From positions 1-64,000 of the IMG/VR virus record IMGVR_UViG_3300033997_000478: a stretch of 64,000 bases of DNA; one strand, written 5' to 3'. Each line of letters opens with the position of its first letter. Position 1 is the first letter of the stretch. The notes under the pieces were generated by a model, which had not been told where the DNA came from, ran no database searches, and saw nothing but the letters and a program-made list of their open reading frames with translations. Positions 1-50,743 of this stretch are shown piece by piece. The position numbers were made by a program, and so were the translations under genes.

Positions 1-2895
1 GAGATCACCATCGTGGTGGAGAACTACGCACTGCTCAACCACCTCTACCGCTACCCGATCAACTACTTCCGCCAGTACTACATGTGGTGGAACGTGCAGG
101 CAGCACTGTGGAAGAACGTTGGCCGCATCACTGACTCCTACCCGCAACGGAATCAGTACCTGCGTGTCAACCTGCCCACCATCCTGCCGCCGATGAACAT
201 CCTGCGTCGCGGCGAAGGTGAGATGACCCGCACCCTGCTGCCCAACTTCGTTGAGCCAGAAGCGCTGTTCATTCTGGAGATCTGGAAGTGGCTGGGCGAG
301 CGCCGTGAGAACTCGGTACTGTCCAAGGTCTCCCCGGAATCGCTGCGTCAGATGAACATCATGTTCGTCGATGGCGACCGCTGGATCATGCTCAACCTGG
401 GACTGCTGGATCAGTGGCGTAAGGCACCGGGTGCTGAACTCACTGAAGACAGCGATCCGTCCAAGGTCAAGGGCGTGCTCGATGCAGTGCCGCTGCAGAA
501 GCGTTTCCTGCGCATGCTGATGACCTTGATGGACAACCGTCTGTCCAAGGAAGAAGCTGCTCAGGTCACCGCACAGATCGACACGGCAGCGGTGCCCACC
601 GAGATCCCGGCTGATAGCCCGGCCGGTGAACCGGTACAGACCGACATCGTCACTGCACGTGCCGAACCGGTCAAGCTGGACATCACCAATGCCGACGGCA
701 GCGTCTCCAAGGTCAAGCTCACCTCGAGCCTGAATCTGGATCGCCTGCCCGAGCAGCTGATCGAAGAAACCGAAGCCAATGCCAAGCGCATTGACGAGGC
801 CATTACCCGCGACCTGGAAGCACTGGAGCACATCGCTGCGCGCTACCAGGAAACCCGTACGGCCGAAGGTGCTGAAGACGCCCCCGAGGCGGTGGAACCC
901 AGCACTGAGGCTGGTAGTTTCATCAAGTACGATCCGGAAGACCGTACGCTCACCTCCGGGGTGATGAACATCGTCAATCAGCAAGCTGACGCCGGCATGA
1001 TCTCTGGTGCCGAGTACCGTCGCATGCAGGCGCTGGCCGATGCGTACACCCGCCTGCCCAATCCCTTCGGTGAGGGTCAGCTGGTGGATATGCTGGACAT
1101 CCCCAAGGATGATCTGGTTCTGCATCCGGAAGAAGTGGCGCCGAATCTGCCGACCGTGCCGGACAAGTCCATGCTCTCCTCGGTGGTGGCCTCCTATGAC
1201 CGCCAGTACCTGCGCAACGTACTGCCCAAGGACATCGTTCGTTCGGTGTTGTCGGTGCAGAATGCAGGCGTGGCCGTTACCGGTTTCCAGATGGAGGAGT
1301 ACCGTGACGCGCTGAGTAACTATCAGCAGTTCTCGGTCAACCTGACCCCGGTGGTGGGCAAGCCTTCCACGGTTCACTTCAAGCTGCCGGTCGTTGATGA
1401 CGATGGCACCTACACCGATAACGGCACCCGTCTGCGTCTGCGCAAGCAGCGCGGTGACATGCCGATCCGTAAGGTGGCGCCCAACCGCGTGGCGCTGACC
1501 AGCTACTACAACAAGGTCTTCATCAATCGAAGCGAGAAGAAGGCGTACACCTATTCGGATTGGTTGCTCAACCAAGTCGCTGCGCGCGCAGCCGACGAAG
1601 AGAACCCCTCCATCGTTTCGGCGATGATGGCCGATGTGTGTGACCACACCATCCTCTTGCCGCGACTGTACATGATCTTCGCCAGTCGTTTCCGCTCGTT
1701 CACCGTCTTCCACGAAGAGCGTCCGCTCAACTTCTTCTTCGACTACCATGCCCGCAAGGCTATGTTCGGCGAAGACGCGGTCGCCGCAGCGGAAAGTAAT
1801 GGTCTGGTGGTCTGTGGTCGCGTGGGCGACAACCTGCTGGTCATCGACAACACCGGAGCTGTCTACGAATCGCAAGGTCTGGAAACCCGTACCTTGGGTC
1901 CGCTGACCACCCTGCTGGACATTACCGGCAAGGCTCCGACGGAGATGGCCGAGATCAAGGTCTTGGGCAAGCTGATCCCGCTGGGTGTTGTACTGGCTTA
2001 CTACCTGGGTCTGAACGAACTGCTGCGCCTGCTGGGCGTGACGCCACGTCGCATCCCCACCGGTACCCGTGCTTATCTGGCCGATGATGAAATCGCCCTG
2101 CGCTTTGAAGATGAGATGTTGGCCATCCCGGCTGACAACGGCGTGCGTTCGATGTTGCTGACCGGCCTGGCTGCTTTTGAAAAGAGCACCCGTAACTACC
2201 CGGTCGCCCTGTTCAATCGCCGCGAGATCTACTTCAACGTGCTGGAGCAGTCCGGCTACGGCGGCCGCTACCTGCGTGAACTGGATCTGCTGCGCGACAT
2301 GTTCGTTGATCCGATCACCGCTGAGCTGCTGGAGGAAATGAAGGAGCCGACCGAGTGGATTGGTCTGCTGCTGCGTTCGTGCCAGTTGCTGGAAACGGAG
2401 TGGGCTCCGGATGAAACCGACATGGCCTACATGCGCATCAAGGGCTACGAGCGTTTTGCTGGCGCCATCTATGGCGAGCTGGTCAAGGCGATCCGTGTCC
2501 AGCGTTCGCGTGGTTCGGTAGCGCGTGCCAAGATCGACATGCACCCCCATGCGGTGTGGACCTCACTGCGCGAAGACCCGGCGGTGAAGATGGTGGAAGA
2601 ATCCAATCCCGTGCACAACCTGCGCGAGCGTGAGGAAGTCACCTTCTCCGGCACCGGTGGTCGTTCCAATCGTTCGATGGTTGGTCGTGCGCGCGTGTTC
2701 CATGAAAACGACATCGGCCTGATCTCTGAGTCCACCAAGGACTCCGGCGACGTGGCCATCACCACTTTCATGACTGCCAACCCGACCCTGATCAACGTGC
2801 GCGGCACCAGCCGCCGTTTTGAAGAAGGTAAGGACGGTGCTGCTTCGATCATGTCTTCACCGGCAATCCTCTCGCCGTGTGCGGATAACGATGAT
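1..2895 (+). CDS. Virion RNA polymerase beta-like subunit (phiKZ gp178-like), exon 1; gene begins upstream of the window
   Basis: Frame is open from base 1. RpoB-like motifs near the end (REEVTFSGTGGRS, GLISESTKDSGDV, SPCADNDD). Joined to 4226 it reads PCADNDD-GKRVNF, matching bacterial RpoB PFLEHDDANRALM. It lies upstream of the head protease, as in phiKZ. Confidence 0.92.
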
Positions 2896-4225
2896 TAATG
2901 GTTCTATTGAATACCTGTTAAGTTAACACTCCTATCTTATGGATGAGAGGAGATTGAGAGATGAAAAATTTGAGGTTCTTGCCGGGGTTGAGTAAATACG
3001 GCTTTAGCGAAAGTGGCCGTATATTCAGCTTCCGCACACACCGGTGGTTGAAGTACAGTAAAGACACAAATGGGTACTTCACCCTACTGCTGATAAATGA
3101 TGACGGGGTTTCATCCCGATACCTCCGACATCGGTTACTGGCACGACTATTTTTGGGCGAACCCAATTCACCCGAATTGCTAGTTAATCACAAAAACGGC
3201 ATAAAGGGCGATGATCGCATCGATAATCTTGAGTGGGTATCACCAACCGAGAATGTCGAGCATGCGGGGGCAATGGGCCTCACACCCAAATGCTTTCCTA
3301 TTTCTGTTCGCCATGTATCAGACGGCACGATCCACCACTACCCAAGCGCTGTCGCAGCGGCGCGCGCTCTCGGCATGAGTAAAGATGCGATCCTGTGGAG
3401 GATTCATGGCGACCCCGACGCCGTCTATCCTGAAGGACGTCAGTATCGTAAGCGCGATGATAATGCAACCTGGTTAACCGGACCTCGTAAAAATGGGCGA
3501 TCGGTGGTTACCCTCATGCGCGACATTCAAACCGGTGACGTTCTACGTTTCGAGCAGCAGGGGAAAGTGGCTGAGTTACTCTCATTGAGTTTGGCGGCCG
3601 TCAACAAGGCAGCCGGCGATGGGAGGCAGCGGTTACTTCATTCTAGGTATCTCTTGAAGCTAGAGGGAGATCCGACCCCATGGCGCGAGATCTCCAACCC
3701 AATGTTGGAAGGGGTGGGGTGTTGTGTGGTTGTCACACACGCTTCAACCGGCAATACACAGACCTTTAACACAGCCAAGGAGTGCGCTGAGGTGATGGGT
3801 CTGAAAGCAACAACTCTCAATGAACGACTTAACAAGGGCGGGCAACGTATCTATGCCGACGGGTACAGCTACAGCCGCCTGTAGAATCCTAGTCCATCTT
3901 CTAGGCGACTAGAAGAATGAATGTCCTTTAATTGCTGGAAACCCCTTAGAGCCACGCTACCACTGCGAGACGAAAGTCAAAGCCACTCCGTAAGGAGGTA
4001 CCCGTCCGTCAGGGCGAGTATGGTTAGAAAAGTGCGTGGATTGGGCAATCAGCAGCCAAGCTCCGTGTAGGAGAAGGTTCAACGACTAAGGCCTTATCAG
4101 CCTGTAGGGTCAAGTGGCCCGAAATGGGGACCCTCTCTCGAAGAGGAAGATATAGTCTCGTCTGCATGGAAACATGCAGCCGCCTTAGGGCGGGTGGTGT
4201 CTAACGAACACCATCGAAGATAACG
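2896..4225 (+). mobile_element. Group I intron in the vRNAP beta gene (boundaries +/-1 nt)
   Basis: Exon ends in U followed by an in-frame TAA. Core elements: AATTGCTGGAAAC (~3930), GGCAATCAGCAG (~4044), GTTCAACGACTA (~4077), AAGATATAGTCT (~4147); GACTA/TAGTC can pair as P7. GNRA-capped hairpin TCTTCTAG-GCGA-CTAGAAGA at ~3897-3916. Intron ends in G (ATAACG). Removing it restores the reading frame. Confidence 0.93.
2961..3884 (+). CDS. Intron-encoded HNH homing endonuclease (NUMOD4-like N-terminus, HNH core, NUMOD1-like repeats)
   Basis: VNHKNGIKGDDRIDNLEWVSPTENVEHA HNH motif; three repeats of the type YPSAVAAARALG / FEQQGKVAELLS / FNTAKECAEVMG; AGGAG RBS; codon usage less biased than the host gene. 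Confidence 0.92.
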   Translation: MKNLRFLPGLSKYGFSESGRIFSFRTHRWLKYSKDTNGYFTLLLINDDGVSSRYLRHRLLARLFLGEPNSPELLVNHKNGIKGDDRIDNLEWVSPTENVEHAGAMGLTPKCFPISVRHVSDGTIHHYPSAVAAARALGMSKDAILWRIHGDPDAVYPEGRQYRKRDDNATWLTGPRKNGRSVVTLMRDIQTGDVLRFEQQGKVAELLSLSLAAVNKAAGDGRQRLLHSRYLLKLEGDPTPWREISNPMLEGVGCCVVVTHASTGNTQTFNTAKECAEVMGLKATTLNERLNKGGQRIYADGYSYSRL

Positions 4226-5350
4226 GGCAAGCGCGTGAACTTCATTCCGATCCAGCACTCCTCCGGTACGTTCTGCAAGGGCGCCAAGCCCACGCCGCTG
4301 CATACCGGTGCCGACATGGTCATGGCCCACCGCACCGATCGTGCGTTCTCGGTGCCGGCCATCAAGGACGGTGTGGTGACCTCGCTGAATGAACGCGGCA
4401 TGGTGGTGACCTACGAAGACGGTACGACCGAGAACATCGCCCTGGGCCGTCGTTACGGCAAGGCGCAAGGTCTGTACTTCCCGCAGAACCTGACCACCCA
4501 GCTGGAGTTGAACCAGCCGGTCAAGGTGGGTGACATCATCGCCTACAACGACCGCTACTTCCAGCCGGACCGCATGGTCAAGAACCAAGTGGTGTGGAAG
4601 GCGGGTCTGTTGGTGCTCACCGCACTGATGGAAACTCCCGACACCCTGGAAGACTCCTCGGTGATCTCCGCCGAAGTGGCGAAGGAACTGGAGACTGAAA
4701 TCACCTACATTCGCGACATCACTGTGCAGTTCAAACAGGCCGTTCATGGCCTGGTAGAACCGGGCCAGGTGGTGGACATCAACAGTATCCTATGTACGAT
4801 TGAGGACGCTGTGACGGCCGAAAATCAGCTGTTCGACGAGCCTTCGTTGGACATGTTGCGTCTGCTGTCGTCCAACACGCCGCGAGCCAAGTACAAGGGT
4901 GTGGTCGAAAAGGTCGAAGTGCTCTACCACGGTGACATGGACGATATGTCCGACACCCTGCAAGAGATCACTGCCCTGTCCGATCGTGAGCGTAAGCGAG
5001 CCGCCCGTGCCCTCCAACAACCGGCCGTTCTCGGCCGCGTCAACGAGTCGGCACGTATCCAAGGTAAGCCTCTGCCGGTGGATTCCTTGGTCATTCGCGT
5101 GTACATCACCAGCCCCACGGCTGCCGGTGTCGGCGATAAGGGCGTGTTCGCCAACCAGATGAAGACCATCTTCGGCCGCGTCATGAATGGGCGCAACGAA
5201 ACTGCCGATGGTCGTCCGCTGGGTGCGATCTTCAGTTACCAGAGTCTGTCCAACCGTATCGTGCTCTCCCCAGAGAAGATCGGTTTGACCAATTCGCTTC
5301 TGATTGAAATTTCCAAACGCGCCGCCAAGGCGTATCGAGGCAACCGATGA
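4226..5350 (+). CDS. Virion RNA polymerase beta-like subunit, exon 2
   Basis: GKRVNFIPIQH continues exon 1; RpoB-like motifs LEDSSVIS and GVGDKGVFANQMK. Confidence 0.92.
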   Translation, partial: GKRVNFIPIQHSSGTFCKGAKPTPLHTGADMVMAHRTDRAFSVPAIKDGVVTSLNERGMVVTYEDGTTENIALGRRYGKAQGLYFPQNLTTQLELNQPVKVGDIIAYNDRYFQPDRMVKNQVVWKAGLLVLTALMETPDTLEDSSVISAEVAKELETEITYIRDITVQFKQAVHGLVEPGQVVDINSILCTIEDAVTAENQLFDEPSLDMLRLLSSNTPRAKYKGVVEKVEVLYHGDMDDMSDTLQEITALSDRERKRAARALQQPAVLGRVNESARIQGKPLPVDSLVIRVYITSPTAAGVGDKGVFANQMKTIFGRVMNGRNETADGRPLGAIFSYQSLSNRIVLSPEKIGLTNSLLIEISKRAAKAYRGNR

Positions 5351-47090: not shown

Positions 47091-49019
47091 ATGGCCACCA
47101 ACACCCCGAACGACAACAACAACGAAACCGGCACCACCAGCGCAGAAGCCATCTTCAACCGCAACTCCGGCAACACCGCCGGTGCCCAGAACGCCGGTGG
47201 CAGCCAGAGCGGCGGCTTCAACCGCAATGCCGGCCGCGCTGCCCGTCCGGGCCTGACCGCTCGCCTGAGCGGCGCACGTGGCGTGGTCTCGCGCCGCCGT
47301 CCGGGTGCCGAACTGGAAGTCATGCGCAAGGCCTTCGAAGAGGCCCTGAGCCAGTTCCACACCTCCGGCCGCCTGCAGGGCGGTGAGAACCTGAAGCTGA
47401 TGCTGATCGATCGCCAGGAACTGGACCGCAAGGTCGAGCTGCTGGTTGCCTACATCCCGATGACCGTCGACAACCAGCTGCACGTGTCGATCTACACCGT
47501 GATCCTGGCCGACCAGAGCGAGAACCTGGACAGCATCAAGTTCCAGGGCACCGGCGGCCGCAACTTCGCCTACACCGTGACCGCAGGCGACGCCTGGGAT
47601 CGCAACCTGTGGGTGAAGGTCGCAGCGATCGTGCAGGAAAACATGGGCGCTGTCGCCATCCAGCACAACGCCGGCGCGCAGGTCATCCCGGCCGAAACCG
47701 ACGTCACCGACAAGGGCCTGATCCACGGCCTGGCGTTCTTCGTCTCCGAAGGCCTGACCCGCACCATCACCGACAAGATCCTGAAGTCCACCGATGACGT
47801 GATCTCGGTCGCCGACATCGGCGACGACGAAATCGTCGAAGGCAAGCTGGTCTACAGCACCCTGCCGCTGACCACCGCCGCCGGCCTGCCGCTGCGTGGT
47901 GACATCCAGGCCAAGCTGAGCTACAGCCAGCGCGGCAACGAGGGTGACCAGCGTGAACGTGCCTTCAGCCTGGACAACAGCCGTCCGCTGGCCGGCGCCG
48001 CCGGCTTCATCGACCTGGGCTGGGAAGACCCGCAGCAGCCGGCCTTCGGCCAGCAGCCGGCCACCCAGCGCTACCGTGCACGCTTCGTCATGACCCGCCT
48101 GGACACCGAAGGTGACTGGATCACCCCGGAACTGCAGCTGCTGTCGCTGGCCGGCGCCACCCTGGTGGCACGTCAGATGGCCTGGGCTCGCATCTGGTCG
48201 CAGGAGTTCCGTACCAAGGAACACGACATCGGCGTGATCGGCTACGAGCTGGCTCCGGGTGGCGAAGCTGAGCGCATCAACACCTCGGCCGCAGCCTTCA
48301 CCAACGAAGCGCTGTACCAGCTGGTGTCGGCGACCATCTACCCGGACATCCTGTTCCAGCTGGACATCGAAGAAGTCGGCGAGCTGTCGTTCCAGAACCG
48401 CGTGCTGCTCGACGCTGCCAACAACAACGCCGATGCGCAGGACGCCGTGATCGCGGCCGCCAACAACCTGACCAACAACGAGTTCACCCGTCTGTGGCAG
48501 GCCGGCACCCCGTTCGTCATGAACGATGGCAACCGCATCCACCTGGGCTACTACGAAGCCAACGACGGTCAGCGTCGTGACATCCGTGACCTGGACTACC
48601 TGTTCATGCTGGAGCGCTTCGGCGCGCAGGATCCGAAGATGGTCGAGCGCTGGCAGGCGACCTTCGACGACGTCGAACGCGACGAAGTCGAGCGTGTGGC
48701 TGAGCGTGAAGACATGATCCGCAAGATCCTGGGCCCGACGGTGACCATCACCGGCTACGCTCGTCGCGTGACCTTCCACCCGCAGGCCCTGGACGTCCTG
48801 CTGGCCGCTTGCGGCGCAGCCGGCCTGACCATCCGTCAGGACTCGCAGTCCTACGGCTTCACCGGTTCGGCCGCTCGCGGTCGTGCTTCGGGCGGTGCCT
48901 TCGCCTTCGGCGGCGGCGCTACGAACAACCTGTTCAGCTCGGGCGTCACCGGCAGCCGTGGTCGCGGCTTCGGCTCCACCTTCACCGGTGGTTCGACCTG
49001 GCGTGGTCGCGGTAACTGA
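47091..49019 (+). CDS. chmA: Chimallin, phage nuclear shell protein (phiKZ gp54 / 201phi2-1 gp105-like)
   Basis: 642 aa, among the strongest codon bias in the window, disordered N- and C-tails, directly upstream of the nvRNAP beta' gene; followed by a strong terminator. Called from size, synteny and family resemblance. Confidence 0.85.
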   Translation: MATNTPNDNNNETGTTSAEAIFNRNSGNTAGAQNAGGSQSGGFNRNAGRAARPGLTARLSGARGVVSRRRPGAELEVMRKAFEEALSQFHTSGRLQGGENLKLMLIDRQELDRKVELLVAYIPMTVDNQLHVSIYTVILADQSENLDSIKFQGTGGRNFAYTVTAGDAWDRNLWVKVAAIVQENMGAVAIQHNAGAQVIPAETDVTDKGLIHGLAFFVSEGLTRTITDKILKSTDDVISVADIGDDEIVEGKLVYSTLPLTTAAGLPLRGDIQAKLSYSQRGNEGDQRERAFSLDNSRPLAGAAGFIDLGWEDPQQPAFGQQPATQRYRARFVMTRLDTEGDWITPELQLLSLAGATLVARQMAWARIWSQEFRTKEHDIGVIGYELAPGGEAERINTSAAAFTNEALYQLVSATIYPDILFQLDIEEVGELSFQNRVLLDAANNNADAQDAVIAAANNLTNNEFTRLWQAGTPFVMNDGNRIHLGYYEANDGQRRDIRDLDYLFMLERFGAQDPKMVERWQATFDDVERDEVERVAEREDMIRKILGPTVTITGYARRVTFHPQALDVLLAACGAAGLTIRQDSQSYGFTGSAARGRASGGAFAFGGGATNNLFSSGVTGSRGRGFGSTFTGGSTWRGRGN

Positions 49020-49306: not shown

Positions 49307-50743
49307 TTGGTGGATTTCGATGCGCTGTTTGAGCAGGCAACGACTCCCCCGGTGATTCTCAACACATTCAACGTCGATACGGTGGATGACAAGACGTTGC
49401 TGGACTCGATGGTGTACACTTACTACGACGGCGATTCGCTGAACGTGGTACCGATGTGTGAATGCCAGCGCACCACTGGTGCCGGCATGATCAATCAGCG
49501 ATGTAGCTTCTGCGGTACGACCGTTCTCCCGCTGAGCGAGCGTCCGCTGGAATCGCTGCTGTGGATGGAACCTCCGGCAGGTGTGGAGACGTTCATCAAT
49601 CCGCAGGTGTGGACCATGCTGTCCAAGGCCATGACCCATGGTGGGATCAATGGTCTGTTGTGGTTGGTGGATCCTCTGGCCATCGTAGGGCCGGAACCGC
49701 ACAAGGAAATTCGACGCCTGATGGATCTGGGCATCGATCGCGGCATCAATCACTTCTACAAGAACTTCGACCAGATCATCGAGCTGCTGTTCAATACGCA
49801 GGTGATCGCCGGTGGCAACCGCCATCAGCGTGAAGAGCTGTGGCAGTTCATCCAGTGCAATCGGCACAAGATCTTCGCCAAGCGACTGCCGGTCCCCTCG
49901 CGTATGGGCTTTGTGGCCGAGCGTACCGTCACCGGTACGTTTGCAGATAAGACCATGAAGCCGATGCTCGATGCGATCCGCACGATCTCCTCGGCAGTGC
50001 ATTCGCAGACGCCACTGGACATCCGCAAGCTCCAGTCGCGCACGATGCTGGCCAATGACCTGGTGGCAACCTACTCCCAGGACTTCATGGCCGCAACGCT
50101 GACCTCCAAGCGGGGTTGGCTGCGTAAGCACGTGTACGGCAATCCGCTGTTCTTCACCTTCCGTGGTGTGATCAGCTCGATGTCCGAGCGCCACGAGTAC
50201 GACGAACTGCACGTGCCGTGGGGCATCTGCATGTCGACCTACTCCAAGCACTTGGAGAACAAGCTCTACAAGACGGCGATCAATGAGCGTGGACGTCCGT
50301 TCACTCCCAACGAAGCTATCGGGCTCATCGAAAGCCATACCCTGCGGTACCACCCGGTCCTCCACAGCTTGTTCAATGAGCTGATCGAGGAATCCCCGCA
50401 CAAGGGCCTGCCGGTGCTGTTCAACCGCAACCCGTCGCTGGACCGTGGTTCGATCCAGGAGTTCTTCATTACCAAGGTGATCGAAGACCCCGAGATCAAC
50501 GCCATCGCAATGTCGGTTCTGTGCCTGAAGGCGCCGAATGCTGACTTCGACGGCGATGCCCTCAACGGCATGGCGATTCTGGACAACCGTTCTGAACGCC
50601 ACTTCGCTGCACTGGCCCCGCACTTCGGTGCACTGGACCTGGATCATCCGCGCCGGATGTCCAACAACCAGGCTTTCCCGCCTCCGGTTGCTGGCGCCAT
50701 CGCGAACATGGTTCATCGCAGCGATCGTACTGTGGTACAATGA
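49307..50743 (+). CDS. Non-virion RNA polymerase beta'-like catalytic subunit (phiKZ gp55-56.1-like); start uncertain
   Basis: Zn finger CEC...CSFC; FNRNPSL; catalytic APNADFDGD; uninterrupted. Confidence 0.93.
   Translation: MVDFDALFEQATTPPVILNTFNVDTVDDKTLLDSMVYTYYDGDSLNVVPMCECQRTTGAGMINQRCSFCGTTVLPLSERPLESLLWMEPPAGVETFINPQVWTMLSKAMTHGGINGLLWLVDPLAIVGPEPHKEIRRLMDLGIDRGINHFYKNFDQIIELLFNTQVIAGGNRHQREELWQFIQCNRHKIFAKRLPVPSRMGFVAERTVTGTFADKTMKPMLDAIRTISSAVHSQTPLDIRKLQSRTMLANDLVATYSQDFMAATLTSKRGWLRKHVYGNPLFFTFRGVISSMSERHEYDELHVPWGICMSTYSKHLENKLYKTAINERGRPFTPNEAIGLIESHTLRYHPVLHSLFNELIEESPHKGLPVLFNRNPSLDRGSIQEFFITKVIEDPEINAIAMSVLCLKAPNADFDGDALNGMAILDNRSERHFAALAPHFGALDLDHPRRMSNNQAFPPPVAGAIANMVHRSDRTVVQ

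What the first reader, a model, noticed from the sequence alone, without database searches (positions are those of the whole stretch)
2881..4245. Group I intron with homing endonuclease inside the virion RNAP beta gene, at the conserved HDDxxR motif
Seen: splicing 2896-4225 gives PCADNDD|GKRVNF. Shifting both sites by 1 nt (2897-4226) gives DD-C-KR, so the junction is ambiguous. The HNH ORF lies 5' of the P2/P3 core, i.e. in the P1-P2 region. Established: intron-encoded HNH enzymes in jumbo-phage RNAP genes can act as weapons against co-infecting relatives (phiPA3 gp210), and the well-known cases are in non-virion RNAP genes. Here the packaged vRNAP depends on self-splicing, while the nvRNAP beta' gene (49307-50743) is uninterrupted.
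Basis: partly seen in the sequence, partly recalled or inferred. Interest (0 to 1): 0.6.

Follow-up and report, generated by a model that had tools for sequence, protein, structure and literature searches.

The report
Mobile intron in phage polymerase gene
A giant nucleus-forming phage carries a self-splicing group I intron, with its own DNA-nicking enzyme, in the gene for its packaged RNA polymerase; it sits at the same spot as the intron already studied in Pseudomonas phage PhiPA3, so it is a new example of a known thing.

Summary
Window 2896-4225 (1330 nt) is a group I intron (Rfam RF00028, 74 bits, E 6e-17). It splits the virion RNA polymerase beta gene, the phiKZ gp178 orthologue, between ...NDD and GKR... 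The intron carries an intact I-HmuI-type HNH endonuclease gene (2961-3884).

Comparison with nine related introns resolves the 1-nt junction ambiguity. The 5' splice site follows U2895, which forms a U.G wobble with G3892. The terminal G is G4225, giving DD|GKR.

The endonuclease ORF sits in the terminal loop of a long-range P1 helix, so the internal guide sequence lies about 1 kb downstream of the splice site.

The PhiPA3 gp210 intron lies in the vRNAP beta gene, directly after the same two aspartates. The window's enzyme is a full-length gp210 homologue (36% identity).

The same intron lineage occurs sporadically in Serratia, Vibrio and Pseudomonas chimalliviruses and in uncultured ones. Close Xanthomonas-phage relatives lack it.

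In two strain variants from metagenomes the intron is several-fold less diverged than its exons, which suggests recent lateral spread.

No spliced RNA could be shown, because the public runs held only unspliced contigs. Verdict: a new member of a known kind.

The parts
1..2895 (+). Exon 1 of the virion RNA polymerase beta-subunit gene (phiKZ gp178 / PhiPA3 gp211 orthologue). Its 5' end is cut by the window edge. It ends ...CADNDD.
   Evidence: PHROG 3148, E 5e-286, profile positions 115-1050. tblastn to chimallivirus beta genes. Synteny with gp177-, gp176- and gp175-like genes downstream.
2896..4225 (+). Group I intron, 1330 nt. It starts with an in-frame TAA (2896-2898) and ends with the terminal G at 4225.
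   Evidence: Rfam RF00028. Alignment with six homologous introns puts the terminal G in one column. GC is 0.51 against 0.59-0.60 in the exons.
2893..2907 (+). 5' strand of P1 and its extension. Exon bases G2893, A2894, U2895, then intron U2896, A2897 and G2900-U2907.
   Evidence: RNAduplex optimum of -14.2 kcal/mol, with the U2895.G3892 wobble at the splice site. The same pairing is seen in PhiPA3 and 2050HW (in HPP-Temi the optimum takes the other GAU of the GAUGAU repeat), and a compact version in ORF-less L121.
2929..2952 (+). Hairpin that pairs the endonuclease Shine-Dalgarno sequence (AGGAG, 2948-2952) with CUCCU (2929-2933). The ATG is at 2961.
   Evidence: MFE fold. Equivalent SD-containing hairpins with different stem sequences occur in PhiPA3, 2050HW and L011. 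On its own the fold is not significant (z -0.7).
2961..3884 (+). Homing endonuclease gene: 307 aa, I-HmuI-type HNH with NUMOD domains. The catalytic His equivalent to gp210 H82 is H77.
   Evidence: Pfam HNH_3, NUMOD1/4 and I-HmuI_NUMOD-like. PHROG 59. 36% identity over the full length to PhiPA3 gp210, E 2e-66. PDB 1U3E.
3881..3894 (+). 3' strand of P1 and its extension, including the internal guide sequence G3892-U3893-C3894. The endonuclease stop codon UAG (3882-3884) lies inside this helix.
   Evidence: 'GUC(C)' lies immediately 5' of P2 in all relatives. In Vibrio phage C-ZP2022 the exon GACGAU pairs with GUCGUC.
3897..3916 (+). P2 hairpin with a GCGA tetraloop.
   Evidence: All seven P2 pairs show compensatory changes among relatives.
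3923..4215 (+). Ribozyme core. P3 3923-3928/4126-4131; P4 3933-3938/4049-4054; P5 3943-3945/4043-4045; P6 4055-4064/4070-4078; P8 4132-4136/4142-4146; P9 4162-4168/4173-4179; P9.x 4193-4199/4209-4215. P7 is inferred as 4084-4088/4153-4157.
   Evidence: RNAalifold on seven homologues gives 57 pairs, 35 of them with double-sided changes. P7 is invariant, so it is assigned only by analogy.
4226..5350 (+). Exon 2 of the vRNAP beta gene (PhiPA3 gp209 equivalent). It begins GKRVNF; the stop codon is at 5348-5350.
   Evidence: PHROG 3148, E 4e-148, profile positions 1052-1423. tblastn.

Best explanation
This is a mobile group I intron of the PhiPA3 gp210 type, sitting in the virion RNA polymerase beta gene of an uncultured nucleus-forming jumbo phage (324 kb, chimallin-encoding, nearest to Xanthomonas phages).

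Proposed mechanism. The gene is transcribed as a precursor. The intron folds with a long-range P1 helix in which the last exon bases G-A-U (2893-2895) pair with G-U-C at 3892-3894, about 1 kb downstream, so the endonuclease ORF is enclosed in the P1 loop. Guanosine-initiated cleavage follows U2895 and exon ligation follows G4225. The result is a continuous beta subunit reading ...NDD-G-KR... through the active-site motif that corresponds to E. coli HDDANR.

The in-frame TAA at the first intron codon stops ribosomes on unspliced RNA. The endonuclease has its own Shine-Dalgarno sequence, which is sequestered in a hairpin. By homology with I-HmuI and gp210 it is expected to nick intron-less alleles at the DD site. 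That would drive homing into, or interference with, co-infecting relatives.

Shown here:
- the ribozyme match
- core helices supported by covariation
- exact exon continuity
- homology to gp210 and the shared insertion site
- sporadic distribution
- low divergence of the intron compared with its exons

Inferred:
- splicing in vivo
- nicking activity
- any competitive benefit
For: - Ribozyme: Rfam RF00028 over the full model, 74 bits. The consensus fold of seven homologous introns has 35 of 57 pairs with compensatory changes.
- Exon continuity: PHROG 3148 positions 1050 to 1052 run across the junction. Intron-less alleles are contiguous with one codon between DD and KR.
- Splice sites: P1 with a U.G wobble at U2895. 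The C-ZP2022 guide sequence GUCGUC is fully complementary to its exon end GACGAU, while the other exons end GAUGAU. ORF-less L121 has a compact P1. The terminal G aligns in all seven introns.
- Endonuclease: full-length homologue of gp210 with the catalytic His conserved. Pfam and PDB place it with I-HmuI.
- Published precedent: the PhiPA3 intron is in the same gene at the same site, and gp210 nicks the intron-less vRNAP allele (PMC11620839).
- Sporadic distribution: 5 of 56 IMG/VR beta genes carry a DD-site insert, while the nearest relatives LucasX and RTH11 lack it.
- Low intron divergence: in the X4 strain there are at most 5 differences in the 1330-nt intron against at least 28 in 1037 nt of exon (Fisher p 1e-6, worst case). 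X12 shows the same trend.
- Composition: the intron is a GC-poor island.
Against: - No spliced RNA was observed. In four public runs, three of them RNA or possibly RNA and all stored as contigs, no joint skips 2896-4225, and contigs cross both intron-exon borders. Those contigs may be DNA or precursor and cannot show absence of splicing.
- Splicing of the PhiPA3 homologue is itself called 'putative' in the main text of the paper.
- The exon part of P1 is only 3 bp (G-C, A-U, U.G). No convincing P10 was found.
- The SD hairpin is not significant by itself.
- Endonuclease activity, nuclear import and any competitive effect are untested.
Confidence: 0.85

Rival explanations
1. The gene is split with no splicing. 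The two halves of beta are translated separately, as GenBank annotates PhiPA3 gp211/gp209 and the 2050HW, C-ZP2022 and HPP-Temi homologues. The intervening RNA would then be a relic.
For: Database records annotate two CDSs. phiKZ-type RNAPs are already built from split beta and beta' fragments (own knowledge). A GTG at 4235 could start a 371-aa product. No spliced read was found.
Against: The break falls inside an invariant active-site motif and leaves exactly one profile position. About 50 of 56 relatives are continuous through it. The ribozyme core keeps its helices through compensatory changes, which a relic would not. No Shine-Dalgarno sequence is seen before 4235 by reading the sequence. 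The PhiPA3 work treats gp211/209 as one vRNAP subunit.
Confidence: 0.05
2. The intron splices one nucleotide to the right (2897-4226), giving DD-C-KR.
For: The sequence allows it: U2896 and G4226 also fit the U...G rule, and the frame is kept.
Against: The duplex model puts the U.G wobble at U2895 and pairs U2896 with A3891. The terminal G of all seven aligned introns is in the column of G4225. Residues at this position in relatives are P, A, M or G, never C.
Confidence: 0.05
3. The intron still splices but is no longer mobile: the endonuclease is inactive or not imported into the phage nucleus. It would be a vertically inherited passenger with no role in homing or competition.
For: No activity data exist. 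gp210 function depends on nuclear import, which cannot be predicted here. ORF-less derivatives (HPP-Temi, L118, L121) show that the lineage does lose its endonuclease.
Against: The ORF is intact over the full gp210 length with the catalytic His kept. The intron is several-fold less diverged than its exons between strains. The closest relatives lack it. Both observations fit recent movement.
Confidence: 0.2

Closest known systems
PhiPA3 gp210 intron in the vRNAP beta gene gp211/gp209 (Birkholz et al., Science 2024, PMC11620839)
   Same: Same host gene (phiKZ gp178 orthologue) and same insertion point, directly after the two conserved Asp codons GAT GAT. Same layout: leader hairpin, HNH ORF, P2, core, then hairpin-UGAAGAU-N4-G at the 3' end. 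The endonucleases are homologous end to end, and the size is similar (1352 against 1330 nt).
   Different: Only 36% protein identity. The phage lineage differs: about 58% GC, nearest to Xanthomonas phages, and only 47% identity to PhiPA3 in exon 2. The first exon-2 residue is G rather than M. There is an immediate in-frame stop rather than one 16 codons in. There is an extra insertion of about 35 nt in the P5 region and a longer P2. No experimental data exist.
I-HmuI / I-BasI nicking HNH endonucleases of the SPO1 and Bastille DNA polymerase introns
   Same: The HNH_3, NUMOD and I-HmuI NUMOD-like domain set, and a sequence match to PDB 1U3E. They are intron-encoded in an essential phage polymerase gene.
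   Different: A different target gene (DNA polymerase), a different ribozyme context, and a C-terminal half that is longer here.
T4 td / nrdB / sunY group I introns
   Same: Phage group I introns that each carry a homing-endonuclease ORF. The 3' half of the core gives blastn matches of about 72% to T-even nrdB introns. From own knowledge, their endonuclease ribosome-binding sites are also hairpin-sequestered and they carry in-frame stops near the 5' splice site.
   Different: T4 ORFs sit in the P6a or P9.1 loops (own knowledge), whereas here the ORF is in the P1 loop. Their enzymes are GIY-YIG (I-TevI and I-TevII) or a different HNH (I-TevIII).
Group I introns of Pseudomonas Litunavirus (N4-like) phages, e.g. 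Pa_WF01
   Same: The ribozyme core is about 85% identical over roughly 200 nt by megablast (about 70% over the longer blastn match). These introns also interrupt a 'DNA-dependent RNA polymerase' gene.
   Different: The host gene is a single-subunit RNAP, unrelated to the multisubunit beta. The insertion site differs, and the ORF lies downstream of the core.

Membership tests
Group I intron (Rfam RF00028) | Covariance-model score above the curated gathering threshold over the full model | tested here: met
   74.1 bits against 50, model positions 1-253 of 253, E 6e-17.
Group I intron (Rfam RF00028) | Conserved core helices P3-P9 maintained by compensatory substitutions | tested here: met
   Of 57 consensus pairs in seven homologues, 35 have double-sided changes. 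P7 is invariant, so it is uninformative.
Group I intron (Rfam RF00028) | P1 with a U.G wobble at the 5' splice site, and a terminal G at the 3' end | tested here: met
   U2895.G3892 is in the optimal duplex. It is supported by the C-ZP2022 guide sequence GUCGUC, which fully pairs with its exon end GACGAU, and by the compact P1 of L121. G4225 aligns with the terminal G of six relatives. The exon arm of P1 is only 3 bp.
Group I intron (Rfam RF00028) | Guanosine-dependent self-splicing | not testable with these tools
   No spliced joint was found in the public contigs. An in-vitro assay or RT-PCR is needed.
PhiPA3 gp210-type mobile intron | Inserted in the vRNAP beta gene (gp178 orthologue) directly after the conserved DD codons | tested here: met
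PhiPA3 gp210-type mobile intron | Encodes a full-length gp210 homologue with the catalytic His (gp210 H82) | tested here: met
   BLASTP E 2e-66, residues 1-304 of 307; H77 aligns with H82 in the NHKNGIKGDDR block.
PhiPA3 gp210-type mobile intron | The endonuclease nicks the intron-less allele and gives an advantage in co-infection | not testable with these tools
   Only indirect evidence: sporadic distribution and an intron less diverged than its exons.
I-HmuI-like HNH homing endonucleases | HNH_3 nuclease domain plus NUMOD-type DNA-binding modules | tested here: met
   Pfam PF13392 (36 bits against a cut-off of 24.8) and PF22083 (40 bits against 27). NUMOD1 and NUMOD4 fall just below their cut-offs. 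PDB 1U3E matches at E 4e-8.
Intein or translational read-through | The insert is in frame with both flanks and free of stop codons | tested here: not met
   A TAA stands at the first insert codon, the insert is 3n+1 long, and the exons are in different frames.

The most novel reading that the evidence does not exclude
The two catalytic-centre motifs of this phage's packaged RNA polymerase may both be battlegrounds for mobile introns.

Beside the beta-gene intron at NDD|GKR, the same genome has an ORF-less group I intron that splits the beta' catalytic motif ...AD|FDGD... (genome 321,927-322,323). The closest IMG/VR relative carries a different intron only 11 nt downstream of the DD site.

The DD-site intron also belongs to a lineage with the ORF in the P1 loop. 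That lineage moves laterally among chimalliviruses of Pseudomonas, Serratia, Vibrio and Xanthomonas-like hosts, and it appears to have moved recently between strains of this phage, because the intron is at least 7-fold less diverged than its exons.

If this holds, vRNAP active-site codons are a general hot spot of intron-mediated competition in nucleus-forming phages, not a PhiPA3 peculiarity.
Probability: 0.45. Interest if true: 0.55.

Novelty: new member of a known kind. Interest (0 to 1): 0.33.

Why it matters
This extends the one experimentally studied 'weaponised' jumbo-phage intron (PhiPA3 gp210) to a distant, GC-rich, uncultured chimallivirus. It also shows that the same insertion site is used repeatedly across host genera.

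Two practical points follow:
- Annotation pipelines split this essential gene into two 'RNA polymerase beta subunit' CDSs plus an 'endonuclease'. The correct product is a single spliced protein reading NDD-G-KR.
- The family alignment gives a concrete P1 and guide-sequence model, with the ORF in the P1 loop, which can be tested on PhiPA3 itself.

It does not open a new question.

Tried and rejected
- Spliced RNA. Read laying on X12, X16, X19 and X4 found no joint skipping 2896-4225, only contigs crossing both borders. The many joints at about 3950-4040 are other organisms' introns with different P5 inserts. This is uninformative about splicing.
- Intron-less strain variants in JGI metagenomes. 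The 22-mer from the end of exon 1 gave 0 hits. The 20-mer from the start of exon 2 gave 9 hits, all unrelated bacterial genes that happen to encode GKRVNFI.
- A local P1 hairpin using the conserved AUUGAA box just after the splice site. It gave no consistent U.G pairing. In ORF-less HPP-Temi that box instead pairs further down the extended P1 stem.
- RNAalifold on the endonuclease leader predicted nothing because of register shifts in the alignment. The single-sequence hairpin has z -0.7. The SD-sequestering claim therefore rests only on per-sequence folds in relatives.
- Pfam finds no domain in either exon; PHROGs was needed. The mir-9465 hit at 2916-2963 (27 bits against 63) is spurious and merely reflects that hairpin.
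- IMG/VR locus L010/L090 is 100% identical over 5.9 kb, so it gives no independent information.
The exons were searched separately by reference.
Full report
**What is there.** The window comes from an IMG/VR virus record of 324,428 bp with terminal repeats, rated complete. It encodes a nuclear-shell (chimallin) homologue at 47091-49016, so it is a nucleus-forming jumbo phage. The gene order downstream of the locus (gp177-, gp176- and gp175-protease-like) is that of phiKZ and PhiPA3.

The long frame 1-2895 ends ...SPCADNDD, followed at once by TAA. A second frame from 4226 reads GKRVNFIPIQ... to a stop at 5348-5350. Pfam sees nothing in either part. PHROG 3148 'RNA polymerase beta subunit' aligns exon 1 to profile positions 115-1050 and exon 2 residues 2-373 to positions 1052-1423. 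The two pieces therefore abut with exactly one residue to spare.

tblastn shows that the closest phages (Xanthomonas LucasX and RTH11, about 72% aa identity) run straight through this point with one codon between DD and KR. So do Xoo-sp14, Burkholderia FLC9 and Pseudomonas DT01. LucasX reads DRDDPKRVNF.

Between the exons, Rfam's group I intron model matches 3875-4179 over its whole length (74 bits, E 6e-17). ORF 2961-3884 is an HNH endonuclease with NUMOD modules. It matches the I-HmuI structure 1U3E by sequence.

In PhiPA3 the order is gp211 (beta, exon 1), gp210 (endonuclease), gp209 (beta, exon 2), and both flanks are annotated as similar to phiKZ gp178. Birkholz et al. 2024 describe gp210 as encoded in a putative group I intron interrupting the vRNAP beta gene. 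[quoted passage not shown] The 2025 review says the same (PMC12908238).

The window's intron therefore lies in the same gene at the same codon boundary. Its ORF aligns with gp210 from residue 1 to 304 (36% identity, E 2e-66). The NHKNGIKGDDR block and the catalytic His are conserved: gp210 H82 corresponds to H77 here. The 5' leader and the 3' tail are also recognisably alike in the two introns. The supposed contrast with 'non-virion RNAP' cases does not exist.

**A family of introns at this site.** The exon-HNH-exon layout recurs in these phages and contigs:
- Serratia phage 2050HW (intron 1371 nt)
- Vibrio phage C-ZP2022 (1439 nt)
- IMG/VR contigs L011, L013/L116 (1399 nt) and L102 (1305 nt)

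ORF-less versions sit at the same site in Pseudomonas phage HPP-Temi (348 nt), L118 (366 nt) and L121 (335 nt).

In a survey of 56 usable IMG/VR beta genes found with exon 2, five carry a DD-site insert, one of which is a duplicate of this phage. One carries an insert nearby, and fifty are continuous. The distribution is sporadic across hosts, and the nearest relatives lack the intron, as expected for a mobile element.

**Splice sites and architecture.** RNAduplex between the splice-site region and the stretch just upstream of P2 gives one long helix (-14.2 kcal/mol):
- G2893-C3894, A2894-U3893 and U2895.G3892 on the exon side
- U2896-A3891 and A2897-U3890 just inside the intron
- G2900-U2907 paired with G3881-C3888

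The same pairing, with 'GUC(C)' immediately 5' of P2, is found in PhiPA3, 2050HW, L011 and L013. HPP-Temi has the same GUC(C), although its RNAduplex optimum pairs it with the upstream GAU of the GAUGAU repeat. Two observations make this more than a fold prediction:
- In C-ZP2022 the exon ends GACGAU instead of GAUGAU, and the guide sequence reads GUCGUC, a perfect six-pair match.
- In ORF-less L121 the same elements collapse into a compact hairpin, GAU|UA-ACAU-UAGUC.

The endonuclease ORF therefore occupies the terminal loop of an extended P1. The guide sequence lies about 1 kb from the 5' splice site, and the ORF's stop codon (3882-3884) is inside the helix.

At the 3' end all seven aligned introns share a hairpin closed on YUAACGA, then UGAAGAU plus about four bases and a G in one alignment column, followed by X-K-R codons. 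X is G here, M in PhiPA3, P in four relatives and A in C-ZP2022. This fixes the intron at 2896-4225 and the product at DD-G-KR. The shifted reading DD-C-KR is not supported.

The consensus fold of the seven introns recovers P2, P3, P4, P5, P6, P8, P9 and a distal hairpin. Of its 57 pairs, 35 show double-sided changes. P7 is invariant and is assigned only by analogy. The ribozyme is clearly under selection for structure.

**Expression features (inferred).** The first intron codon is an in-frame stop here and in most relatives. The endonuclease Shine-Dalgarno sequence (AGGAG, 2948-2952) is paired in a hairpin. Equivalent hairpins with different stem sequences occur in PhiPA3, 2050HW and L011. 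The single-sequence fold is not significant, however, and RNAalifold failed on the leader alignment. Because these phages transcribe inside a protein nucleus and translate outside it, splicing would be expected before export. This was not tested.

**Signs of recent movement.** The intron is a GC-poor island: 0.51 against 0.59-0.60 in the exons.

In a marine-sediment strain variant (run X4) one contig spans 2000-4366 with 33 differences. At least 28 fall in the 1037 exon bases, and only one listed difference (at most five in all) falls in the 1330 intron bases. Fisher's test gives p about 1e-6 in the worst case.

An independent study (X12) shows the same pattern: at most 2 differences in 950 intron bases against at least 18 in 953 exon bases. 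Differences start within about 30 nt of either junction, so any co-conversion tracts are short. This fits recent lateral transfer of the intron between diverged strains. Localised recombination of the exons is an alternative explanation.

**What could not be shown.** No run yielded a spliced junction. The RNA-type runs are stored as contigs, which cross both borders and may be DNA or precursor. Two metagenome scans for intron-less strain variants found nothing relevant.

**Side observations.** The genome has four group I introns:
- One, ORF-less and 397 nt long, splits the vRNAP beta' gene (gp180/gp212 homologue) at ...LGAD|FDGDTASF..., inside the catalytic NADFDGD motif.
- Two, each with an HNH ORF, lie in the DNA polymerase gene. 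The one at 73.7 kb shares 88% identity with the beta intron over P6-P9.

The closest IMG/VR relative (L138, 66-69% aa) has a different 361-nt intron 11 nt downstream of the DD site. The core is about 85% identical over roughly 200 nt by megablast (about 70% over the longer blastn match) to introns of N4-like Pseudomonas phages, which also sit in an RNA polymerase gene of an unrelated type.

**Verdict.** This is a genuine, well-formed mobile group I intron with an I-HmuI/gp210-type endonuclease in the virion RNAP beta gene. It is a new member of the PhiPA3 gp210 kind, not a new situation.

Noticed in passing
Outside the window: genome 321,927-322,323 (L009:1503-1899): An ORF-less 397-nt group I intron (RF00028, 62.6 bits) splits the vRNAP beta' gene (PHROG 2986; PhiPA3 gp212 / phiKZ gp180 homologue) at ...LGAD|FDGDTASF.... 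That is inside the catalytic NADFDGD motif, which PhiPA3 gp212 reads continuously as TADFDGDTVSF. Both vRNAP catalytic motifs of this phage are therefore occupied by introns.
   Followed up: partly
Outside the window: genome about 71,879-72,180 and 73,668-73,951, minus strand (L008, L007): Two more group I introns, each next to a 380-440-aa HNH ORF (PHROG 59), lie in a gene matching the DNA polymerase PHROG 3011. The 73.7-kb intron is 88% identical to the beta-gene intron over P6-P9 (128 of 146 aligned bases) but differs elsewhere, so the introns look mosaic or paralogous.
   Followed up: partly
L138 (IMGVR_UViG_3300024996_000016), locus about 2239-2599: The closest IMG/VR relative of the beta gene (66-69% aa) has no DD-site intron. 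Instead it carries a different 361-nt ORF-less group I intron 11 nt downstream (DDPKRV|NFIPIQ). An insert there would disrupt the presumed recognition site of a DD-site endonuclease.
   Followed up: partly
window 3924-4164 against L148 (Pseudomonas phage Pa_WF01) and other Litunavirus records: The ribozyme core is about 85% identical over roughly 200 nt by megablast (about 70% over the longer blastn match) to introns of N4-like Pseudomonas podophages. In Pa_WF01 the intron interrupts a 'DNA-dependent RNA polymerase' gene of an unrelated single-subunit type. An 80% match also occurs in E. coli phage nepoznato.
   Followed up: partly
window 2000-5300 (runs X4, X12): Strain variants in a marine-sediment run and in an 'organism A' run differ from the window by about 2-3% in the exons but hardly at all in the intron. 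Near-identical sequence turns up in 12 studies, from subsurface, sediment, soil, freshwater, indoor, wastewater and gut samples.
   Followed up: partly
window about 3985-4019: An insertion of about 35 nt in the P5 region, containing a CUCC-GUAA-GGAG hairpin, is absent from all six other DD-site introns in the alignment.
   Followed up: no
window 47091-49016 and 49307-50743: A chimallin (nuclear shell, PHROG 4795) gene is followed by an uninterrupted RNAP-subunit gene (PHROG 2987, full length). This is the arrangement of phiKZ gp54/gp55 (own knowledge).
   Followed up: partly
GenBank records of PhiPA3, 2050HW, C-ZP2022 and HPP-Temi (L001, L003-L005): All of these records annotate the interrupted vRNAP beta gene as two separate CDSs. 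In HPP-Temi a spurious 'hypothetical protein' is also called inside the ORF-less intron. No intron feature is annotated in any of them.
   Followed up: no
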